Source: Mytilus trossulus
Lineage: Eukaryota
Assembly (NCBI RefSeq): GCF_036588685.1
Contig: NC_086379.1
Span: forward strand, 84,258,001-84,322,000
DNA length: 64,000 nucleotides
Direction of reading: 5' to 3'
The stretch's first letter is position 1. The number at the start of each line of letters is the position of its first letter. The translations under genes were made by a program, and so were the position numbers. Below are positions 36,001-54,100 of the stretch, piece by piece. Below the pieces are notes generated by a model that was not told the origin of the DNA, searched no databases, and saw nothing but the letters and a program-made list of their open reading frames with translations.

Positions 36001-39000
36001 CAGAAATCTGATGTACAGTAGTTGTCGTTTGATATAAATTGTGATTTATATAGAGAGTTGTCTCATTGGCACTCATACCACATTTTTCTGTATCTGTATA
36101 CAAGAAAAGTACAAACCAAAAAATGAAAAAAACAAATATGATAGTCTGACATCCACCAAATAACCACTGATTTACAGGTCCCAGACATGTCACAGGCACA
36201 TACAGAGTGGTAAGGGTTTAAAGATGAATATGAGGTTACATTTTAATAGCAATGTTTATTGGCATGCAATAAAATTGAGAAAGGAAATGGGGAATGTGTC
36301 AAAGAGACAACAACCCGACAATAGAAAAAAACAACAGCAGAAGGTCACCAACAGGTCTTCAATGTAGCGAGAAATTCCCGCACCCGGAGGCGTCCTTCAG
36401 CTGGCCCCTAAACAAATATATACTAGTTCAGTGATAATGAACGCCATACTAATTTCCAAATTGTACATGCTGTTTAATTACCTTATTAGCTAATCTCTCC
36501 AGTGTATTAATCTTCTCCCTAGAATCTTCCTCGTATTCTTTCTTGTCTTTAAGGAAGGTAGATTTTACTTGTTGTATTGTATCTGAATGTTTGGCTCTCA
36601 TCTGCATCACTTCAGCTTCAAGGCTTTTTATCTTAGACAACTGTTCATCTTGTAAATCCTTTATTCAATCAAAAGACATGGCATGATTTTTATTGTAGCA
36701 TAAAAAGACAAATATTACCATAATTGTTTTTAAAAGTAAGGTAATAACACCTGATTCAAAGTGCTTTTATTTTTTTAAATCTTCAACATATAAGGAAATA
36801 AAACATATACTATCAATATCAGTAGATAATCAAATAAACAATTCCTTATTTGGAGTTTTTTGTTTTCTATTTGTGTCTATTAGGTTTTGGTGAAGAATGA
36901 TTGAAAATAACCAGATCATAATTATTTTTAACTGAAACAAATTATTTTATAAAGATTCCAAAAAATCATCAGTAAAGACCTTCCATAATATATAATTTAA
37001 AAATATATATGTACTTCCTCTTTGCTCTCACATATATTTTTGAAGTGGATAATAGATTAGTGATTCCTATATAGTTGTCTTTTAAGTACAGACTTGTTTT
37101 TATAAATTACAATTCTGCAGTTGTTTTTACAGAAAATTTTCAATTGCTGCTTTTCAACCAGTTGTATATATCTTTAAAGAATGTCTCTGTTGTTTTCTTC
37201 TAATGTTCTATCATTACTTGTTACCTTATATTCTTGAAGTTGTGACAGTTCTTCTGTTGTTTTCTTTAAGGTATTTTCTTTCTCCATTAACAGTTTTTGT
37301 AGTGCTTCCTTTTTCTCGTTAAATTCTAGTTCCATGAGACTTTTCTCATCTTGTATGTCCTGAATTTCATGTTTGTAATGGTCACTGAGAGTTATAATGG
37401 CCGTCTTTCTCATGGTTTCCTTTGTATCCATATAACTCATGTACTCATGCTACAAAATATGACACGACATTAAACAATCATCAATAAATCAATCCAAGAA
37501 ATATGTAGACACACTTAAGTCTAGTTTATACAACAAAACAAATAATTTTAAGACCTATTTAGTATGAAATTTTGAAAATATTGTGTTGACTGTTATATTC
37601 TAAAGTTACCTCATAGAATGCATATTATGTTTATGATGTACATGTACATGTAAATACAAAATATAAATAAACTTAAAAAATTCATTATGACCAAATAGAA
37701 ATTTCAAAATCAGATGTTGCCATTTTTTCTTCTGTCAATTAAATAGTAGCTACATGCTATAATTGAACACATAACAATAAAACTGACTGTATCAATAACA
37801 CTGAAATGTTTATTAAACTTTCTCTAGTTGTTTAGTAAAGGCTTATATCCTATATCAGCAAATATAAGGACATCTGACACCTAACTACAGTAACATCTAT
37901 AATTATTTTCACTTTTAAAAGTTGCATGATTGTACTTGTATACACACTTACGCTTTCCATTTTAACTCTGTTAGCTTCCTGTTGTAACCATTCATGTTCT
38001 TTACGTCTGACAGAGAATTAAAGAAATTCAACACACACCATAATGTATAATGGACATTGAAGATTGTATTGAAATGTAAGGATATGATCTTTGATTTTGA
38101 AATCCTAACTTATGTTATATGCAATTATTTTATTCAATGGTTGTGATTGGATGACTATCAACGTAAAACTATCAATCTACTTGTCAGTAATTTAGGCTAG
38201 GGAAGATGTAATACAATGTATTGAATTTCAGAAAGTGTAACATTTTGCACTTAGAAATCTTCTATTTATATAATTTCAATATTCATCACTGTCAGGAGAA
38301 ACCCAGAGAATTTGCATAATAGAAGCCTCAATTGATGACAAATTTACGGCAATACTTTACACAACATAATCTTATATTTGTCATCAATGTTATGCCTTTT
38401 TTCTATATATATATGGTGTACACCCATTGTGCAGTGTTTAATTTACATGCAGTATATCATTTACTAGTAACAGTAAGAAAAGATACAGTTCTTGTACTCT
38501 GGCTCTGTTGGTTTCCAGTTCATTTGTAACTTTTTCCAGTCTGAAATTAAAACAGTTTATATCATCATTCATTATTTATTATACATACATTACATACATA
38601 CATTAAATCTTTCAAATTAATGTAATGCTTACATTAATTTGTAAGATTTTCTATGATAATATAATTTAATATTACATCACATGTGTAGATAGTATTATAC
38701 ATGATATATAGGTATAGAGATATAGGGGAAGGATTGAGATCTCGTAAACACATTTAACCTCTCTGCATATTTGCGCCTGTCCAAAGTCAGGAGCCTCTGG
38801 CCTTTTTTAGTCTTGTATTATTTCTAATTTTAGTTTCTTGTGTACAATTTGGAGTTTAGTAAGGCGCATTATCATTGAACTAGTATATATATTTGTTAAG
38901 GGGCCATCTGAAGGACGCCTCCGGGTGCGTGAATTTCTCGCTGCATTGAAGACCTGTTGGTGACCTTCTGCTGTTGTTTTTTTATTTGGTCGGGTTGTAG

Positions 39001-40903
39001 ACTCTGACACATTCCCCACTTCCATTCTCAATTTTATATATTATGTACTGTGTTACAACACTAGATAATAAAGGGCTGCGCTTTAGCGCATGATACGCCC
39101 GTTGCTCTTTTAACTTGTCTTTTATGCTTTAAATATGATCAACTAGAAATAGTGTGAGCCCTGTCAAAAATACCCCCCCCCCCCCCAAAAAAAAAAATAA
39201 TAAATAAAAATGCACAAAAAATTGGCACTATTAAGGTCAATAGATATAAACAATTTATCAAAGTTGCATAAAATCTTGTGAAAGTGTTAGTTACAATGTA
39301 TTGTCCCAAAATTTGAAAATCCCCCCTTTTTTAGCATAAAAATTCATAACATGGAAATGTAAAATCTGAAATTTATAAAAATTAAAAGGGAGCTTACATC
39401 AATAGATATAAACAATTCAACAAAGTTTCATGGACATTGGTGAAAGCCTTTTTGAGTTATTGTCCGAAGTGTTGAAAATCCCCCCTTTTTTATGAATAAA
39501 GCTCCATAAATCCAAAACTTAAAATCTGAAATTAAAAAAAAATGAAAGGGAGCTTACGTCAATAGATATAAACAATTCACTTAAGTTTCATGGAAATTGG
39601 TGTAAGTGTTTTTGAGTTATTGTCCGAAGTGTGGACGACAGACAGACGGACAACGGTATACCATAATACGGCCCGTCTAAAAGAAGACGGGCGTATAAAA
39701 ACTGGTACCTTGAAGTTGACTGACTGAATAACACTTGAAATTCTAATATTAGCATGTACAATGTATAAGTGACTTTTAAAGATTGATTAGTCAGCAACCA
39801 TTTGATTTTCTGGGGGGGGGGGGGGCTATGGGTTTTTTTTTCTGGACAAATTTTTTTCTCGCCTGCAGCGAAAAACAATCTATTTTTTTCGTGACAAGTC
39901 AAAAACAATTTTTTCCTTTTAATTTATAGCATTACATATAGTGGCAGCTGAGGGTGAAACAAACAATTTTTTTTTATCAGAATCAAAAACAAATTATTTT
40001 TTTCTCCCAAAACTGAAAAACAAACTTTTTTTTTACAAAAAAAAACATGCCCCCCCCCCCCCCCGAAAAATCAAATGGTTGCTGCCTTATAGAAAAATAT
40101 GAAATTATAAAGGTTTTTATAACTTAAAAATGATATATAAAAAGCAGGCAATCTCATAAAGATTGTTATACATAAAGTGTGTACATCCAACATGGCGACC
40201 AAGAATAACGCAAATATACCATGTAACATCATGAACATGGTCACCAATAATTGGATGTACACACTTATTGACACTATATTTAAAACGATCTTTGTAAATT
40301 TACCTGCTTGCTGTAAATCATGTTTTTAAGTTTTTAATACACTAATAATATAATATTATTTAATAAACAATGTTTAAAAGTTCCAATATGTGTAAATATT
40401 AAGTGTAATTCGATCATTACAAGTATTTTTTCGGATAATAACAGTGTTATTCTCTCATTCCTGTTACCAGTAACCCGATAAAAATTGATGAGAAAAGATT
40501 AACATTTTAGATTATTCCGGGAAAAACACCATACAAACTTTTGAGATATTAATGATATTGATTATAGATTCTATATGGTTATGTCGCTACGACTTGTATA
40601 TTTGTTGGCCATATAAATATTAAATTACTATCTGAACTTTCAACGGTAAATAAAACAAAGTGATTTAGACGCACAAATTCATTAAATTATTGTCAATTTT
40701 GAATTCTTAACAATCATTCATGCCAATATTTTGATTTGTTCTATGTGACACTTGACTCACTCCTGTTGTAATATGACTTCTTTCTCCGATGGTTCTGGAG
40801 TTCTTGGCTTTTCTAGTCCTTCTCCTGCACCGTCATCTTTGTCTCCTTTACCTCCCTTCTTTCCTTTCTTTCCCTTTCCCTTTTTTCCTTTCTTGGGTGG
40901 CAT
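32738..40903 (-). CDS. CCDC166: Coiled-coil domain-containing protein 166-like (DUF4515 family), 6 exons, 308 aa
   Basis: Exons 40903-40761, 38540-38487, 38006-37952, 37449-37225, 36658-36482, 33010-32738; all GT-AG, total 927 nt in frame. MPPKKGKK N-terminus; LQEYKDLQDEQLSKIKSLEAE...FLKDK...HTNRIKTENRQLRKELL resembles vertebrate CCDC166 (recalled, not searched). Confidence 0.85.
33557..33699. mobile_element. Short MITE with degenerate CAGGGGCAGATCCAG / CTGGATCAGCAGCTG termini
   Basis: Imperfect terminal inverted repeats and an internal TTCCAACC repeat. Confidence 0.5.
36268..36466 (+). mobile_element. Repeat family C copy in CCDC166 intron 5
   Basis: Reverse complement of about 1670-1867 and 38840-39036. 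Confidence 0.8.
36482..36658 (-). CDS. CCDC166: CCDC166-like exon 5
   Basis: Weak acceptor TAAAG, DLQDEQ...LANK, donor GTAATT. Confidence 0.8.
37225..37449 (-). CDS. CCDC166: CCDC166-like exon 4
   Basis: Acceptor TTGTAG, HEYMSYM...LQEYK, donor GTAACA. Confidence 0.85.
37952..38006 (-). CDS. CCDC166: CCDC166-like exon 3
   Basis: Acceptor TGTCAG, RKEHEWLQQEANRVKMES, donor GTAAGT. Confidence 0.8.
38487..38540 (-). CDS. CCDC166: CCDC166-like exon 2
   Basis: Acceptor TTTCAG, LEKVTNELETNRARVQE, donor GTATCT, phase 2-2. Confidence 0.8.
38730..39036 (-). mobile_element. Repeat family C copy in CCDC166 intron 1
   Basis: Matches 1590-1867. Confidence 0.8.
39060..39701 (+). mobile_element. Pearl/HINE (Helentron-associated)-like non-autonomous element with tandem-repeat core
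   Basis: Subterminal inverted ATACGCCCG (39093) / CGGGCGTAT (39688); about 160-bp internal repeats (CAATAGATATAAACAATT three times); GACA/GACG microsatellite; 3' hairpin CCCGTCT...AGACGGG. Confidence 0.7.
39788..40089. mobile_element. MITE with TIRs CAGCAACCATTTGATTTT / AAAATCAAATGGTTGCTG and poly-G/poly-C subterminal tracts
   Basis: Inverted termini read directly. Confidence 0.85.
40761..40903 (-). CDS. CCDC166: CCDC166-like exon 1
   Basis: ATG at 40903, MPPKKGKKGKGKKGKKGGKGDKDD...ILQQ, donor GTGAGT. Confidence 0.85.
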
Positions 40904-41178
40904 GATTTATATATTTTTTAAACTTTATCAAATGGCGTCACTGGTGACTACGGTAACAAAGAACTAGGTAAAATAACTATTTCGCGTCCGGGTTTTGGTG
41001 ATTATTATCCTTCATGAATTGTCTTTAAATGGTTTTAAAACATTATAAATCTTTAAAAAAATGCAATAAATTTATTTTAGATTTGGTTATTTTGGAAATG
41101 TTTACGTTATTTGAGTTGGAAATGTATACGAATTATAATAACGGGATTAAAATACTTATTTTTTAATTCGGAACAAAT
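40904..41178. promoter_or_regulatory. Bidirectional promoter and 5' UTRs shared by CCDC166 and LSM11
   Basis: 275 bp between divergent ATGs; YY1-like AAATGGCG (40930-40937) and X-box-like GTGACTACGGTAAC (40944-40957). Confidence 0.7.
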
Positions 41179-41554
41179 ATGTCTGCGCCCATGGAAAATA
41201 TTGCGGGAGAATTGAAAGTAGAAATATCTGAAAATATTCCTGAAGAATTAGATTTGACATCCCCAAATTTGAATCCTCTGAAAGCTCTTTACTCCGAAAA
41301 TGTATATTTGCCACACAAAAACCCAACAACGTTCAATAATCTGGCAGAATATGAAAATGTTGTTATCAAAGGAAATGTCACATCTAATAGAGGGAGGGGG
41401 AGAGGGAAAAAAGTCCCAAAAGCCACCAGAACAACTACCATAAAGCCACCTGCTGTAACAGAAGGTGTTAACACACAAGAATCCGATGAAAATACTGCTA
41501 AGATGTTAGCACGTAGAAAAAAAATGAATCGCAATGTACTGACAAGAATGTCGG
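41179..41554 (+). CDS. LSM11: LSM11 exon 1
   Basis: ATG at 41179, donor G|GTAAGA, phase 1. Confidence 0.92.
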
Positions 41555-44500
41555 GTAAGATCATTTGAAATAAGGAACTGGCTACGGTTACATGGAAATG
41601 TAGCAATAATAAAAATATTATTGTTACATGAATTTGTGCGTCTAAATCACTTTGTTTTATAATTTTTAATAATAAAATAATAAAAGCTGAAGACATTTAT
41701 TTTATTTTTGGAGCATGTTTAAGTCTGACACATTTTTTATGAAACCATCCCAAGGAGTCATCACACACCAGTGATGCCACATTGTGAATGTATCAGATAC
41801 TGTACAATTCCATTCTGCGATATTCCGCTTTTAGAAGATAAGGCAACCTATAATGTTTGCCATGGTTGCCATTGTCTATTACACTACTACCATTAACTAG
41901 TCTAACAAGCATCACTACAAATTAAATTATTAATACACATAGTGGGTAATACACAATTTCCAAGGTTGATCCGTTGTAGATAAATTTCTATCAAACTACA
42001 ACTTGGAAAAACATTTTGGTCAAATTGTATTGTGAAGGACAAAGCCCCTATTAAATGAGCACTGTCAATGAAAATATACTGTCATTGACTGTCATAATAT
42101 TATCAAATTGTTTTACAGAAATTGATGAAGGTCCCCTCACTATTCTAAAGAAAGCTGTGGAAAAACAACACAGAATTAAAGTTTGGACCAGAAGTGCTGT
42201 CACATGGAGGGGCTACTGCAAAGCTTATCTTATAGCTTTTGATAAACATTTTAACCTGGTAAGTCAAACTGTTCTGAAGCAGGGTGAAACTTTTGTATAA
42301 GACACCTCATAGCTTTTGATAAACATTTTAGTTGTGCTGAAATCAGATAAAAATAAACGGTTTTGTTTTTAGAATTTTATAAATAGGAATACAAGTGTAA
42401 TTTTAAAATGCCAATTGCTACCAATTCAGCCTTTGAAAAATAAAGATACTGTTTTAAAATATTTTTTTCAACTTTGAATTCAGGGGGAAAGGGGGGAGGG
42501 CATCCTTCATTTAAAGAACAAACTTGATACCCTTTTTCTTTATGTATTTTGACTAATATTCTGCACTCTTTATGTATTATTCATTCTTTTGAAAACACCA
42601 TTCAGACCCCTTCCAAATGATATTTAATCTATTTTATCAACTGACAAAATTAAAAAATTAAACCAGTTTACATATCATGTATTTGCAGGCATTGATGGAT
42701 GTTGATGAAACATATCGTATTCCCAAAGTGATCAGAAAACCTCTTCTGGAGACGGTAAGTATTCCTTTAATCTCCTCCTACATTCATGACATTACAAAAC
42801 TCAGCCTTAAGTATTTCTAGTCATCTATTCACATGAATGAGAGAACCTCTTCTGAAGACAGACCTAAAGTATTCCATTAATCTCCTCTTATATTACAAAA
42901 CTCAGCCTTAAGTATTTCTAGTCATCTATTCACATGAATGAGAGAACCTCTTCTGAAGACAGACCTAAAGTATTTCATTAATCTCCTCTTACATTACAAA
43001 ACTCAGTTTAGATTATTCCTAGTCTTAAGAAAACCTGTAGGAGATGATGAAAATTCCTTACAATTAAAAAACAAAAGAATTTTATATTGAAGTCACCTCT
43101 TCATTGTTGAAGGCCGTACAGTGACCGATAGTTGTTACTTTCTGTGACATTTGGTCTCTTGTGGAGATTTGTCTTATTGGCAATCACACAACATCTTCTT
43201 TTTTTAGATCTCAAGGTTGCACTTTGTCATGTTTGTTAATACATATAAAAAAGAAGATGTGGTATGATTGCCAATGAGACAACTATCCACTAAAGACCAA
43301 AATGTCACAAACATTAACAACTATAGGTCACCGTACGGCCTTCAACAATGAGCAAAGCCCATACCGCATAGTCAGCTAAAAAAGGCCCCGATAAAACAAT
43401 GTAAAACAATTCAAACGAGAAAACTAACGGCCTTATCTATGTAAAAAAATGAACGAAAAACAAATATATAACACATAAACAAACGACAGTTGTTTCACAA
43501 AGCACGCCTCTTTTGGAGCCATAATATTCAGACATTTTGTTTTGTTTACCTACTGGTTTTCAGGTATAATTTCTATGTTGCATCTTATAAAAGATCCTTG
43601 ATGAATATTGTTGTTGGTGTGTTTTTGTCTTGTGAAACATGTCCACCTCATTAAATGACTGCAGCAATCCCTTAAGTGTTCATAACAGCTTCATTAGTTT
43701 ATTATTGATTTCAGATTAAAGCCAAAATTTTTACCATCATGGTAGTAGGATGCTATCTGAAATTATTGTGAAAGATTATGTAATTTGGATATATATACAT
43801 TTAAGTACTGTATAGCAGGTGTGTTTATAGTATGAGTGTAAAATTTTGCGATTTTTATTGAATAAGGTATACAAAATATTTTGGTGGTTATTATTTTCGT
43901 GAATATTATTTGGAGATTTTTTTCTACCTGCAAAAATAAGCGAAAATTTATAACCACGAAAATAAATCTAGTCTACAGTATGTTATTTAAAATCAAATGT
44001 AAATTGAGTCAAATCAGTAAATATGCATTTGATATCTTATGCCCCTTCAACAATAATAATATTAAAACCAGAAAGACATCTTATACATGCAGGTCACCCT
44101 ACAATCTTTAAATTTGTAATTATTTTCAGAAATCAAAAGAAACAGAAAGGGATATTGCTATGCAAGGACTATCCAAGACAAGTAGTGATGAAAAGTTGAC
44201 ACAGGTACAATCTGAAAAAACATCAATACAACAATCAGAGAAGGAAGGAGGTGGTGAGGCATTAACAGGTGAGATCGAAGAAGGTCTTCAAGCATTAACA
44301 CATGAACAATCAGAGATGGCAGAAGGTTATAAAGCATTAACAAAGGAACAATGTCACATGACATTGAGTGAGAGATTAACAGACTGTACAGACAGTGAAG
44401 ATACAGATAGTGGTGTGGTGAGAATGACGGAAAATCTGTCTATCAATCAAACGTCAGCTATAACCCATTCAGACAAATATAGAGAGATTGCGTCAGAAGA

Positions 44501-51178: not shown

Positions 51179-54100
51179 CTAAAATTTGAAAGAAGACGCA
51201 TTTAGTTTTTCTATTTCTATATACAGGTATATAAGCTTTATCTATATTTTGCTTTCTGTAAAGTTTTGACGAAATAGATTGATTATCTTCTTAAAAAAAC
51301 AACATAAACAATACATCAAAATTTTGATTCATTTTACCAAAGAGGACTCTATGGATTCAATTCATTTACTTTTGTGGTAAAAATGTATTTACTGCTGAAG
51401 ACAATTGTACAATGAATAATAATTAAGAAATACATCATGGGGGCTTGAATATATCATGATTATACCACAGGTTATCACTTCATGGTAAATATTTTACCCT
51501 GAGCGATAGCGAGGGGTAAAATATCAGCATAAAGGGACAACCAGTGGTAGAATCACAATATTTTCATTTTAATTTGTGTTGAACACAATACACATACTTT
51601 TCATACTTTTTATAATAGAAGTTATTTCACTCAAAATGTGTTAAAACGGCAAAATATCACTTTTAAATCATGCTTTGAGTGGGGAAAAGCCAAGTTTGTC
51701 TGGCATAGATCCTGTCCTTAATTGACAAATGAAAGTAATTTGTTTAAAAAGTGTGTAATATCGGAATCAAATCGGTTACTGGCAAATGAACTATTGCAAA
51801 AAGGCAGTTTATTACATAATCCTTAAACAAACAAAATTCAGCTGTTGTCTTTTGTTGCTGTATAACATATTTGTTTTTCGATCATTACTTTATACGTAAG
51901 TTTTCTAGTTTGAATTGTTTTACATTTGTCGTTGCGAGGCTTTTCATAGCTGATTATACTGTATAGGTTTTTCTGATTGTTGAAGAGTGTACATTGACCT
52001 ATAGTGGTTGACTTCTATGTCATTTGGTATCTGGTTGAGAGTTGTCCCGAAGACTTTAAACAGATTTGACCTCATTCTCGTGTCTGATTATTTAGAAACT
52101 GGTTGAACTGCACCACACATTGTGGTATCAATCAGGGATATCAGTGTATCAAACCAGTATTATTGTTTATGCAAAAAATGGATGAAAATTAATTTCTGCT
52201 AACTATAACAATATATAAGAAAGAGAGGAGGTATGAAGAAAGCTGCTAAAATCTGTAGATTAGTATGATGCTGACTATTTATCATGGATTATCTCCCCCT
52301 ATAATACAAGCAGACACATTTGTATAAACATTTACCAATCTGCCCTGAATTAATACTTACTGTTTACATGGATTACCTCCCCTTACAAAACTACAAGACA
52401 CATGCATTGTATTTAAGAATTGAATGCTTCTTTTTGTAACTTCATTGGGGTGTAAAAGTGTTGACCTAAGTACATTTTGTATGAAGCGCAGAAGCGCTTC
52501 ATTCTAAAAATGTGTGCAGTCAACACTTTTACAACCCTATGAAGTTACAAAAAGAAGCATTCAATACATTGTTTAGCTAGGATCATGAAAACACGAATTT
52601 TATAAATTTTTTATTTAATTCACCTGTGCACTTTATTGTGGGACCTCGTGTTATCATGAATGATAAGTTTTATTGTGTAATGCAATTGCTTAAGGAATAA
52701 CATGTGATGTGCAGTTAGCCAATCAGAATAACGTATTATAATTAAACATACATCTAATGTAATTATTAACATTTTATGCATATCTGCCCTAGGTAAATAC
52801 TTACTGTTTCCAGTTTGCTGTGGTTCATTGGTAACTTCATTTGACCTAGAGATAGAAATACATTTACTCATTTAACATAACAAAACAAAAACATGCCTGA
52901 TAAGAACAACATATGCATTTAAATCTCTGACACTTTTTGATATCAATGAATTGACAAAACTGTGAAAATCATTTATATACGAGTGATTTATAGTTGACAG
53001 TCAAACAGCTAATTAAGAATGTGCAAAAGATTAAAAAGTGAGACAAAAGTGAAATAAGAGGGAAAGAGAAATTATGTAGATTGAAACAATAACTGTACAG
53101 CAGCTTTTTTTCCAACAATATAAATTTACGTTTTGGGCATTAACAAATAGTGTCTCAATTATAAAAAGAAATCACAATCAGAACCACTGTTTATATATGA
53201 TATATAATCTGTGAATTTGCTGTGGTTATAATGAATATTTTAATGTGTTCACTTTCTGGAATAATTAGATTCTGTCATACCAAAGAGACCTGTGTATTTC
53301 TGTTCTATGTATGGCAAGATTAATGTTTAAATCAGAAGCCTTGGTATCAAAAGGTCATCAATAACCTCCAAAATTTATCATGGAAAAGTTAATCTACTAT
53401 ACTTAAGATACATTTTTGACTTTACTGTACTTACTGTCTAAACTTTTTCTTCCTGCTATTTTTAGCACCAGGAAGTTGATCAACATCAGCATTTTCTTGT
53501 TGCTTTTTATTTCTATGCTTGGCTTTAGCTCGTTTTTCTTCCTCATCATCTGAGAACTCTACAAACTGAAATATAAGAAGTTCATTAAATCAGGATGATC
53601 ATTTTTTGTAAGATTTTTTTTTTAAATTTTCATGTGTCTTTTATAGGTTACTTTATTGTGCTCATAGCTCATTGTTGAAGGCCTTATAGTGCCCTGTTTA
53701 CACCCTTTGGTTTGTTGTGGGTTGTCTCATTAGAAATCAAACCACATCTCCTAAGACTCCTTTAAAATCCTTTTTTAAAGGTGTAATACCACCAAATCAT
53801 GGTACCTCACATCCGGTTGTAAATAGGTCGACAAAAATATTCCTTGAATTTGACAGTTGTAGGTAATTAATCCTACATTTTATTGCAGTAAAACATTTCT
53901 GGGTCATAAACATATATCTTGGGTATTCCAAAGCACCATTATTTTTTTGTTTTGTGTTTCTATAGGATATTTTGGAAAGTTGAGGTTACATGGTTACTAA
54001 ATCTTGTACACAGGTTAAATAAGGGAAGAAATTTGATTGGTTAACTTCCAATGATGGTTATTTTCTAATATGCAATGAAATATTATGTGAATTTTTTCTA

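What the first reader, a model, noticed from the sequence alone, without database searches (positions are those of the whole stretch)
40650..41660. Perfect 33-bp inverted repeat at mirror positions in the first introns of head-to-head CCDC166 and LSM11
Seen: ATGAATTTGTGCGTCTAAATCACTTTGTTTTAT occurs identically in the sense strand of both pre-mRNAs, starting at intron-1 position 79 (CCDC166) and 74 (LSM11). Identity stops sharply at both ends, there is no TSD, and I saw no third copy in the window. The pair brackets a 1-kb cassette holding exon 1 of each gene plus the shared promoter. Inference, three options: (a) a shared promoter-proximal DNA or RNA element co-regulating the two genes; (b) recombination sites for an invertible cassette, where inversion would swap first exons of different phase (2 vs 1) and frameshift both genes; (c) the scar of a template switch or gene conversion at an open promoter.
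Basis: partly seen in the sequence, partly recalled or inferred. Interest (0 to 1): 0.82.

Follow-up and report, generated by a model that had tools for sequence, protein, structure and literature searches.

The report
Repair scar copied into a transposon
The perfect 33-base inverted repeat is real and unique in the genome, but it is best read as an ordinary DNA-repair scar: a short piece of one gene's first intron was copied backwards into a break inside an old transposon in the neighbouring gene's first intron.

Summary
The two arms, 40650-40682 (-) and 41628-41660 (+), are 33/33 identical and 945 nt apart. Identity ends sharply, and these are the only two copies in the 1.3-Gb assembly. Intron positions 79 and 74 and exon phases 2 and 1 are correct.

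In this copy, 130 bp present in the nearest relative are replaced by 45 nt (41630-41674). The first 31 of these, plus a shared AT, make up the 33-mer.

The junction sits at the 3' foot of a 14-bp hairpin in the transposon's terminal repeat. The transposon pieces on either side of the arm are collinear, so the cassette has not been inverted since the transposon arrived. The copy therefore went from left (CCDC166-like intron) to right (LSM11 intron).

Nothing supports a shared regulatory element or an invertible switch. "Sense in both pre-mRNAs" follows automatically from inverted copies across a divergent promoter.

This is an ordinary mutation of low interest.

The parts
40650..40682 (-). Left arm, the inferred template (source). 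It is unique sequence in intron 1 of the CCDC166-like gene, at intron positions 79-111.
   Evidence: The surrounding 40645-41560 has no other copy in the genome.
41628..41660 (+). Right arm, the inferred copy. It is 31 templated nt (41630-41660) plus the 2-nt AT (41628-41629) shared with the end of the transposon hairpin.
41630..41674 (+). The 45-nt filler block. It replaces the 130 bp that the nearest transposon copy (L004) carries at this place. The last 14 nt (41661-41674, AT-rich) are of unknown origin.
   Evidence: Pairwise alignment, multiple alignment. No second template was found in the window.
41574..41629 (+). The outer 56 nt of the terminal inverted repeat of a Mutator-like non-autonomous DNA transposon (2 mismatches to the family). 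It begins 19 nt after the LSM11 exon-1 donor.
41598..41629 (+). Hairpin inside the terminal repeat (14-bp stem, 4-nt loop). Its 3' foot is exactly the filler junction.
   Evidence: -8.7 kcal/mol as DNA, z -4.8, and no shuffle out of 200 folds as well.
41675..41867 (+). Resumption of the same transposon copy, collinear with the terminal repeat and 90% identical to the nearest copy. The copy is truncated after 41867 and has no second terminal repeat in the window.
40760..40903 (-). Exon 1 of the CCDC166-like gene (ATG at 40903, donor G at 40760, phase 2).
   Evidence: There is a weak DUF4515 hit on a downstream exon.
41179..41554 (+). Exon 1 of LSM11 (phase 1).
   Evidence: It matches the human LSm11 N-terminus at E 5e-7, including the terminal NVLTRM.
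40504..40644 (+). Fragment of an older low-copy repeat (70-74% identical to three other loci). It ends 5 nt before the left arm, and the left arm is not part of it.

Best explanation
The repeat is a mutational scar: a templated (filler) insertion. A Mutator-like non-autonomous transposon first inserted 19 nt into LSM11 intron 1. Later this copy suffered a break or a stalled, aborted synthesis at the 3' foot of a 14-bp hairpin in its terminal repeat. The free 3' end (ending ...GTTACAT) paired through a 2-nt AT microhomology with the + strand about 950 nt upstream, in CCDC166-like intron 1. It copied 31 nt there and let go. After 14 more nt of unclear origin it rejoined the transposon 130 bp further in. 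The net result is a 130-bp deletion, a 45-nt insertion, and a perfect 33-nt inverted duplicate. Shown: the right arm lies at a transposon deletion junction, the left arm is the only other copy in the genome, the junction falls at the hairpin foot, and the transposon is collinear across the arm. Inferred: the enzymology. Rough split by my own judgement, not computed: fold-back ('snap-back') priming of a long resected 3' tail on its own strand about 50%, which gives inverted orientation in cis directly; template switch to the sister chromatid or at a stalled fork about 30%; abortive gap repair after a transposase cut about 20%. The near-mirror intron positions (79 and 74) are taken as coincidence. 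On the right side the position is fixed by where the transposon landed (19 nt after the donor) and where its hairpin ends (56 nt in).
For: 1. Window 41564-41629 and 41675-41867 match dozens of dispersed copies at 80-97%, and the homology stops at 41629, where the arm begins.
2. In 81 of 83 other transposon ends, the bases after GTTACAT read NGGAGACTAA. None carries the 33-mer.
3. The nearest copy has 130 bp where the window has 45.
4. The 33-mer has only two copies in 1.3 Gb.
5. The hairpin foot coincides with the junction. Two other copies (L005, L076) carry independent rearrangements at the same base.
6. The transposon copy is about 10% diverged from its nearest relative, while the arms differ at 0 of 33 positions. 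Since 0.9^33 is about 0.03, the copying is younger than the transposon insertion.
7. Published work describes the same product: single-copy gap filling inside TIR transposons, with cis bias mostly under 5 kb and median microhomology of 2 bp (PMC8277862), and fold-back templated inverted insertions at breaks (PMC11724301).
Against: A template about 950 nt from the junction is far for the classic snap-back insertions in the paper I read, where the loop was 41 nt. The 3' junction is not clean: 14 nt are unexplained. A 2-nt microhomology is no evidence by itself. The left arm lies only 5 nt beyond the end of an older repeat fragment, so its own history is not fully clear. No outgroup, second haplotype or read data were available, so the order of events rests on the internal logic of one assembly. 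Mirror placement within 5 nt is unlikely by chance (under 1% for a template anywhere within about 1 kb), although this was noticed post hoc.
Confidence: 0.8

Rival explanations
1. Same kind of event, opposite direction: the 33-mer arose in the transposon copy (untemplated, or from a lost third source) and was later copied into the CCDC166-like intron.
For: The left arm sits 5 nt beyond the truncated end of an older repeat fragment, so it too lies next to an old breakpoint. No outgroup is available to polarise the event.
Against: This needs two events and an unexplained origin for 33 non-transposon nucleotides. No third copy exists in the assembly. The right arm is demonstrably secondary, since it replaces transposon sequence. 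Nothing is demonstrably missing at the left arm.
Confidence: 0.07
2. A functional element shared by both genes (option a): a promoter-proximal DNA site or intronic RNA motif, kept identical by selection.
For: Perfect identity, symmetric placement at about +75 in both first introns, and sense orientation in both pre-mRNAs.
Against: The right copy is filler inside transposon debris. Sense-in-both is a geometric necessity. No Rfam hit, including U7-type RNAs. The 33-mer has no structure of its own (-0.2 kcal/mol, z +0.65). No other promoter in 1.3 Gb carries it. Perfect identity is explained by youth.
Confidence: 0.05
3. Recombination sites of an invertible promoter/exon-1 cassette (option b), or a substrate for occasional homologous inversion.
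For: Inverted perfect repeats bracket a 1-kb cassette. In principle 33 bp of identity can support rare recombination.
Against: The transposon parts are collinear across the right arm, so there has been no net inversion since its insertion. The reference orientation gives intact genes. The inverted state would join exons of phase 2 and phase 1 to the wrong genes. No recombinase-sized reading frame lies in or beside the cassette. The arms arose by a one-off repair event.
Confidence: 0.03
4. Scar of a micro-inversion made by staggered breaks, which leaves inverted duplications at inversion breakpoints (mechanism recalled from Drosophila comparative studies, not checked here).
For: That mechanism gives perfect inverted duplicates with sharp ends and no target duplication, bracketing the inverted segment.
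Against: The terminal-repeat piece (inside the arms) and the internal transposon piece (outside) keep the order and orientation of intact copies. A pre-inversion state would therefore have had a split transposon. It would also have had both first exons facing the wrong genes.
Confidence: 0.02
5. Assembly artefact or error confined to one haplotype.
For: No reads could be examined. The assembly holds only one copy of the locus.
Against: By my own judgement, artefacts of long-read assembly are long fold-backs or collapses. They are not a 33-nt inverted insert sitting in a microhomology-bounded deletion at a hairpin foot, inside otherwise normal gene structure.
Confidence: 0.03

Closest known systems
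Single-copy Pack-TIR formation by transposition-independent gap filling in animal DNA transposons (Tan et al. 2021, PMC8277862)
   Same: Host sequence is copied into a gap inside a TIR transposon. The parent lies in cis within a few kb, microhomology is about 2 bp, only a small part of the transposon is lost, and the capture happens after insertion.
   Different: Only 33 nt were captured, whereas their pipeline needed a BLAT score of 100 or more. The second terminal repeat is missing here. The captured piece is intronic and has no coding potential.
Fold-back / snap-back templated inverted insertions at double-strand breaks (SD-MMEJ, polymerase-theta end joining; PMC11724301, PMC5728401, PMC2943611)
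   Same: A deletion plus an insertion whose inserted bases are an inverted copy of nearby sequence on the same molecule. Short microhomology at the junction, secondary-structure-forming sequence at the break, and insert length within the reported 5-34 bp range.
   Different: The template is about 950 nt away rather than tens of nt. One junction carries 14 extra nt. The enzymes cannot be identified from sequence.
Abortive gap repair that creates internally deleted non-autonomous elements with filler DNA
   Same: An internal deletion starting close to a terminal repeat, with foreign filler at the junction.
   Different: That route requires a transposase-made gap and a sister copy. This copy is old (about 10% diverged) and one-ended, so a transposase-independent break is at least as likely.
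Bacterial invertible promoter switches (fim, hin type)
   Same: Inverted repeats bracket a promoter-containing segment.
   Different: There is no recombinase, the arms arose from a one-off repair event, the inverted state would be non-functional, and there is no sign of past inversion.

Membership tests
Templated (filler) insertion at a deletion junction | The insertion coincides with loss of resident sequence at the same site | tested here: met
   130 bp of the nearest transposon copy are replaced by 45 nt at 41630-41674.
Templated (filler) insertion at a deletion junction | An identical template exists elsewhere, typically nearby in cis | tested here: met
   The only other copy in 1.3 Gb lies 945 nt away on the same molecule.
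Templated (filler) insertion at a deletion junction | Microhomology at the switch points | tested here: inconclusive
   There are 2 nt (AT) at the entry junction. The exit junction is obscured by 14 unexplained AT-rich nt.
Templated (filler) insertion at a deletion junction | Dependence on a particular polymerase or pathway (Pol theta, Pol delta, MMBIR) | not testable with these tools
   This needs genetics or an induced-break assay.
Pack-TIR / Pack-MULE (Tan et al. 2021 operational definition) | Non-transposon sequence flanked on both sides by sequence of one transposon | tested here: met
   Transposon sequence at 41574-41629 and 41675-41867 flanks the filler.
Pack-TIR / Pack-MULE (Tan et al. 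2021 operational definition) | Both terminal repeats present (each at least 10 bp of the consensus termini) | tested here: not met
   The window holds only one terminal repeat, and the copy is truncated after 41867.
Pack-TIR / Pack-MULE (Tan et al. 2021 operational definition) | The captured fragment is long enough for an unambiguous parent (BLAT minScore 100) | tested here: not met
   The captured stretch is 33 nt.
Invertible DNA switch | Both orientations exist in the population of molecules | not testable with these tools
Invertible DNA switch | A dedicated recombinase next to or inside the element, and both states functional | tested here: not met
   The cassette holds only the two first exons and a 275-bp spacer. 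The longest other reading frames are 45-135 aa overlaps. Inversion would mis-join phase 2 and phase 1 exons.
DNA transposon bounded by the two arms | Target-site duplication outside the arms and further copies in the genome | tested here: not met
   The flanks are ...GGTAA and AATTT..., with no duplication. There are only two arm copies genome-wide.
Mutator-like (MULE) non-autonomous transposon (the element that hosts the right arm) | 9-11 bp target-site duplication and long terminal inverted repeats | tested here: met
   9-bp duplications flank L004, L009, L010 and L011. Both ends are alike over at least 126 nt. No transposase was examined, so the superfamily call is provisional.

The most novel reading that the evidence does not exclude
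The template was not chosen at random. The donor lies in the transcribed, open promoter-proximal part of the divergent partner gene, at a near-mirror distance from the first donor site. This would fit templating from exposed DNA, or from the nascent CCDC166-like pre-mRNA, whose sense sequence equals the inserted + strand, so that the bottom strand would have been made by reverse transcription during repair. That would be a natural germline trace of transcription-coupled or RNA-templated break repair at a bidirectional promoter.
Probability: 0.06. Interest if true: 0.55.

Novelty: new member of a known kind. Interest (0 to 1): 0.22.

Why it matters
The main value is as a worked example. A striking 'perfect symmetric inverted repeat around a shared promoter' turns out to be a repair scar once the hosting transposon is recognised. 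The direction of copying and the order of events can be read from a single assembly. It adds one natural instance of a long-range (about 1 kb), 31-33-nt inverted templated insertion at a hairpin in a transposon terminal repeat. This is shorter than what Pack-TIR surveys detect and further from its template than the laboratory snap-back events in the paper read here. It has no evident consequence for either gene.

Tried and rejected
**High-copy element fragment.** Rejected: only two copies genome-wide. Looser core hits share no flanks.

**Longer diverged inverted duplication.** Rejected: flank identity is at background level.

**Transposon bounded by the arms.** Rejected: no target duplication, and real exons lie inside.

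**Staggered-break inversion.** Rejected by transposon collinearity.

**Structured RNA or a known RNA family, including a U7-like Sm site suggested by AATTTGT...TCTAA.** No Rfam hit at E up to 1, and the 33-mer does not fold.

**Second template for the 14 extra nt.** None found in the window.

**Left arm as part of the older neighbouring repeat.** Rejected: homology ends at about 40644 and the other copies continue differently.

**Large protein searches.** Not used, because the question did not depend on them.

**Spliced gene models.** Exons were searched singly, by reference.

**Earlier notes of the scan.** They held nothing on this transposon or on template switching.
Full report
**Observation.** The 33-mer is present exactly as described, at 40650-40682 on the minus strand and 41628-41660 on the plus strand, with 945 nt between the arms.
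- No dinucleotide shuffle of the window gave a match.
- When the two contexts are aligned on the 33-mer, identity falls to background at both ends.
- No target-site duplication lies outside the arms.
- In the whole 1.3-Gb assembly the 33-mer occurs only at these two places, allowing up to 3 mismatches.
- A looser search with the 24-nt core gave seven further 3-mismatch hits, against two for the reversed control. The four I fetched share no flanking similarity with either arm.
- It is the only perfect inverted repeat of 24 nt or more within 3 kb in the window. The other eight pairs are 70-96% complementary and look like transposon pairs.

**Gene context.**
- The minus-strand exon 1 runs from the ATG at 40903 to a GTGAGT donor whose G is at 40760. 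It is 143 nt long (phase 2).
- The plus-strand exon 1 runs from 41179 to 41554, with the donor G at 41555. It is 376 nt long (phase 1).
- The arms therefore start at intron positions 79 and 74.
- The plus-strand exon matches the N-terminus of human LSm11 (6v4x_D, E 5e-7), down to the NVLTRM that closes the exon.
- A reading frame about 500 nt downstream, taken as the next LSM11 exon, matches Sm-fold proteins, including LSm11.
- The CCDC166 identity rests only on a weak DUF4515 hit on a downstream exon.
- Exons were searched one at a time by reference.

Searching 40300-42000 against the window's own genome shows that 41564-41629 and 41675/41705-41867 belong to a dispersed repeat. It has dozens of copies at 80-97% identity, and every match to the first piece stops at 41629.
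- The family has 9-bp target-site duplications (L004, L009, L010, L011).
- Its terminal inverted repeats begin GGCACTGG and stay alike at both ends for at least 126 nt.
- Elements are 1.0-1.9 kb long.
- A 32-nt hairpin motif of the terminal repeat occurs 469 times, which implies about 235 elements.
- I call it a Mutator-like non-autonomous transposon. This is provisional, because no transposase was examined.
- The window copy starts at 41574, 19 nt after the LSM11 donor. It is truncated after 41867 and has no second terminal repeat in the window.

**The junction.** In 81 of 83 other transposon ends, the bases after ...GTTACAT read NGGAGACTAA and continue with the terminal repeat.
- In the window copy, the bases after GTTACAT are the 33-mer.
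- Against the nearest relative (L004, 90% identity over 193 bp), the window has 45 nt (41630-41674) where L004 has 130 bp. Transposon sequence then resumes in the same orientation and order.
- The first 31 of the 45 nt, together with the AT that ends GTTACAT, make up the 33-mer. The remaining 14 nt are AT-rich, and I found no template for them.
- The junction lies at the 3' foot of a 14-bp, 4-nt-loop hairpin in the terminal repeat (41598-41629; -8.7 kcal/mol as DNA, z -4.8).
- Two other copies have independent changes at the same base. L005 has a deletion between two ACAT microhomologies, and L076 has a small insertion. This suggests mild recurrent fragility there: 3 of 84 ends, counting the window.

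**Direction and order of events.**
- The right arm replaces transposon sequence, so it was put there after the transposon inserted.
- No transposon copy carries it, and its only other copy in the genome is the left arm, 945 nt away. Capture therefore happened in place, with the left arm as template.
- The terminal-repeat piece lies inside the arm pair and the internal piece lies outside. They still keep the arrangement of intact copies, so the cassette has not undergone a net inversion since the transposon arrived. This excludes a staggered-break inversion scar and argues against an operating switch.
- The transposon copy is about 10% diverged from its nearest relative and 13% from the majority consensus. 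The arms show 0 differences in 33, and 0.9^33 is about 0.03. The copying is therefore clearly younger than the insertion. Youth, not selection, explains the perfect identity.

**Mechanism (inferred).** A break or an aborted synthesis at the hairpin foot left a 3' end ending in AT.
- To produce the plus-strand sequence of the right arm from that end, the template must be the plus strand at 40650-40682. That is the same strand, upstream.
- This is the geometry of fold-back ('snap-back') priming on a resected 3' tail, which yields an inverted copy in cis directly.
- A switch to the sister chromatid, a fork-stalling switch, or abortive gap repair after a transposase cut would give the same product.
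- The literature describes this class. Single-copy captures inside TIR transposons of animals arise by transposition-independent gap filling, with a strong cis bias (mostly under 5 kb), median 2-bp microhomology and small transposon deletions (PMC8277862).
- Short (5-34 bp) fold-back templated inverted insertions form at breaks in yeast (PMC11724301).
- Secondary-structure-forming sequences drive synthesis-dependent microhomology-mediated end joining (PMC5728401 and PMC2943611, abstracts listed).
- The present case differs in its long template distance (about 950 nt) and its messy second junction.
- It falls below the size threshold of the Pack-TIR survey and lacks a second terminal repeat. 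It works like that process without meeting its operational definition.

- 'Identical in the sense strand of both pre-mRNAs' follows automatically for any inverted duplicate that straddles a divergent gene pair.
- A shared regulatory or RNA element has no support. There is no Rfam match at E up to 1, no fold of the 33-mer and no other occurrence at any promoter. One copy is secondary filler in transposon debris.
- An invertible cassette lacks a recombinase, would break both genes, and has left no trace.

**What remains uncertain.**
- The near-mirror placement (79 versus 74) is the one feature not explained. On the right side it is set by the transposon's landing point plus 56 nt of terminal repeat, so I treat it as coincidence.
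- Chance alone would put the template within 5 nt of the mirror point in well under 1% of placements. An influence of open, transcribed chromatin, or even the nascent RNA serving as template, cannot be excluded.
- The left arm lies 5 nt beyond the end of an older low-copy repeat fragment (40504-40644). The other copies of that repeat continue differently, so this says nothing about the arm's origin, but it leaves a small chance of a more complex history.

**Limits.** I did not try to reach the same DNA in public collections by other tools. Polymorphism, presence in a second haplotype, conservation in relatives and rare inverted molecules are therefore all untested. The assembly holds a single copy of the locus. 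Other first-stage notes on this window report further local duplications within LSM11. I did not check them.

**Verdict.** It is an ordinary mutation of a known class, so interest is low.

Noticed in passing
window 41574-41867; loci L004-L042, L046-L105: A Mutator-like non-autonomous DNA transposon family. It has a 9-bp target duplication, terminal repeats of at least 126 nt starting GGCACTGG, a 14-bp hairpin at repeat positions 25-56, elements of 1.0-1.9 kb, and about 235 elements in the genome. At least two subfamilies differ in an 83-bp internal segment.
   Followed up: partly
L005 (minus strand, around 1671-1734) and L076: Two other copies of that transposon carry independent rearrangements starting at exactly the same base as in the window, the 3' foot of the terminal-repeat hairpin. 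One is a deletion between ACAT microhomologies and the other is a small insertion. This suggests a recurrent fragile point.
   Followed up: partly
window 41555-41574: The transposon inserted only 19 nt downstream of the LSM11 exon-1 donor site, leaving the GTAAGA donor intact. The copy has lost its far end (more than 690 bp and the second terminal repeat), about 190 nt before the reading frame that carries the next exon (it opens at 42055).
   Followed up: no
window 36303-36422 and 38886-39005: A 120-nt inverted repeat pair, 93% complementary and 2463 nt apart, brackets two coding exons of the CCDC166-like gene (about 36449-36640 and 37174-37440). They are probably two copies of one repeat in opposite orientation.
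   Followed up: no
window 39786-40090: A palindromic element with long G-runs and C-runs (104-nt arms, 70% complementary, 97-nt spacer) in CCDC166-like intron 1. It looks like a MITE.
   Followed up: no
window 40504-40644; L044, L045: A fragment of an old low-copy repeat (70-74% identical to loci on contigs C2 and C14), truncated 5 nt before the left arm.
   Followed up: partly
window 43101-43351 and 52419-52565: Two compact inverted-repeat elements (52-nt arms at 90% with a 147-nt spacer; 47-nt arms at 96% with a 53-nt spacer), MITE-like. The first lies in an LSM11 intron.
   Followed up: no
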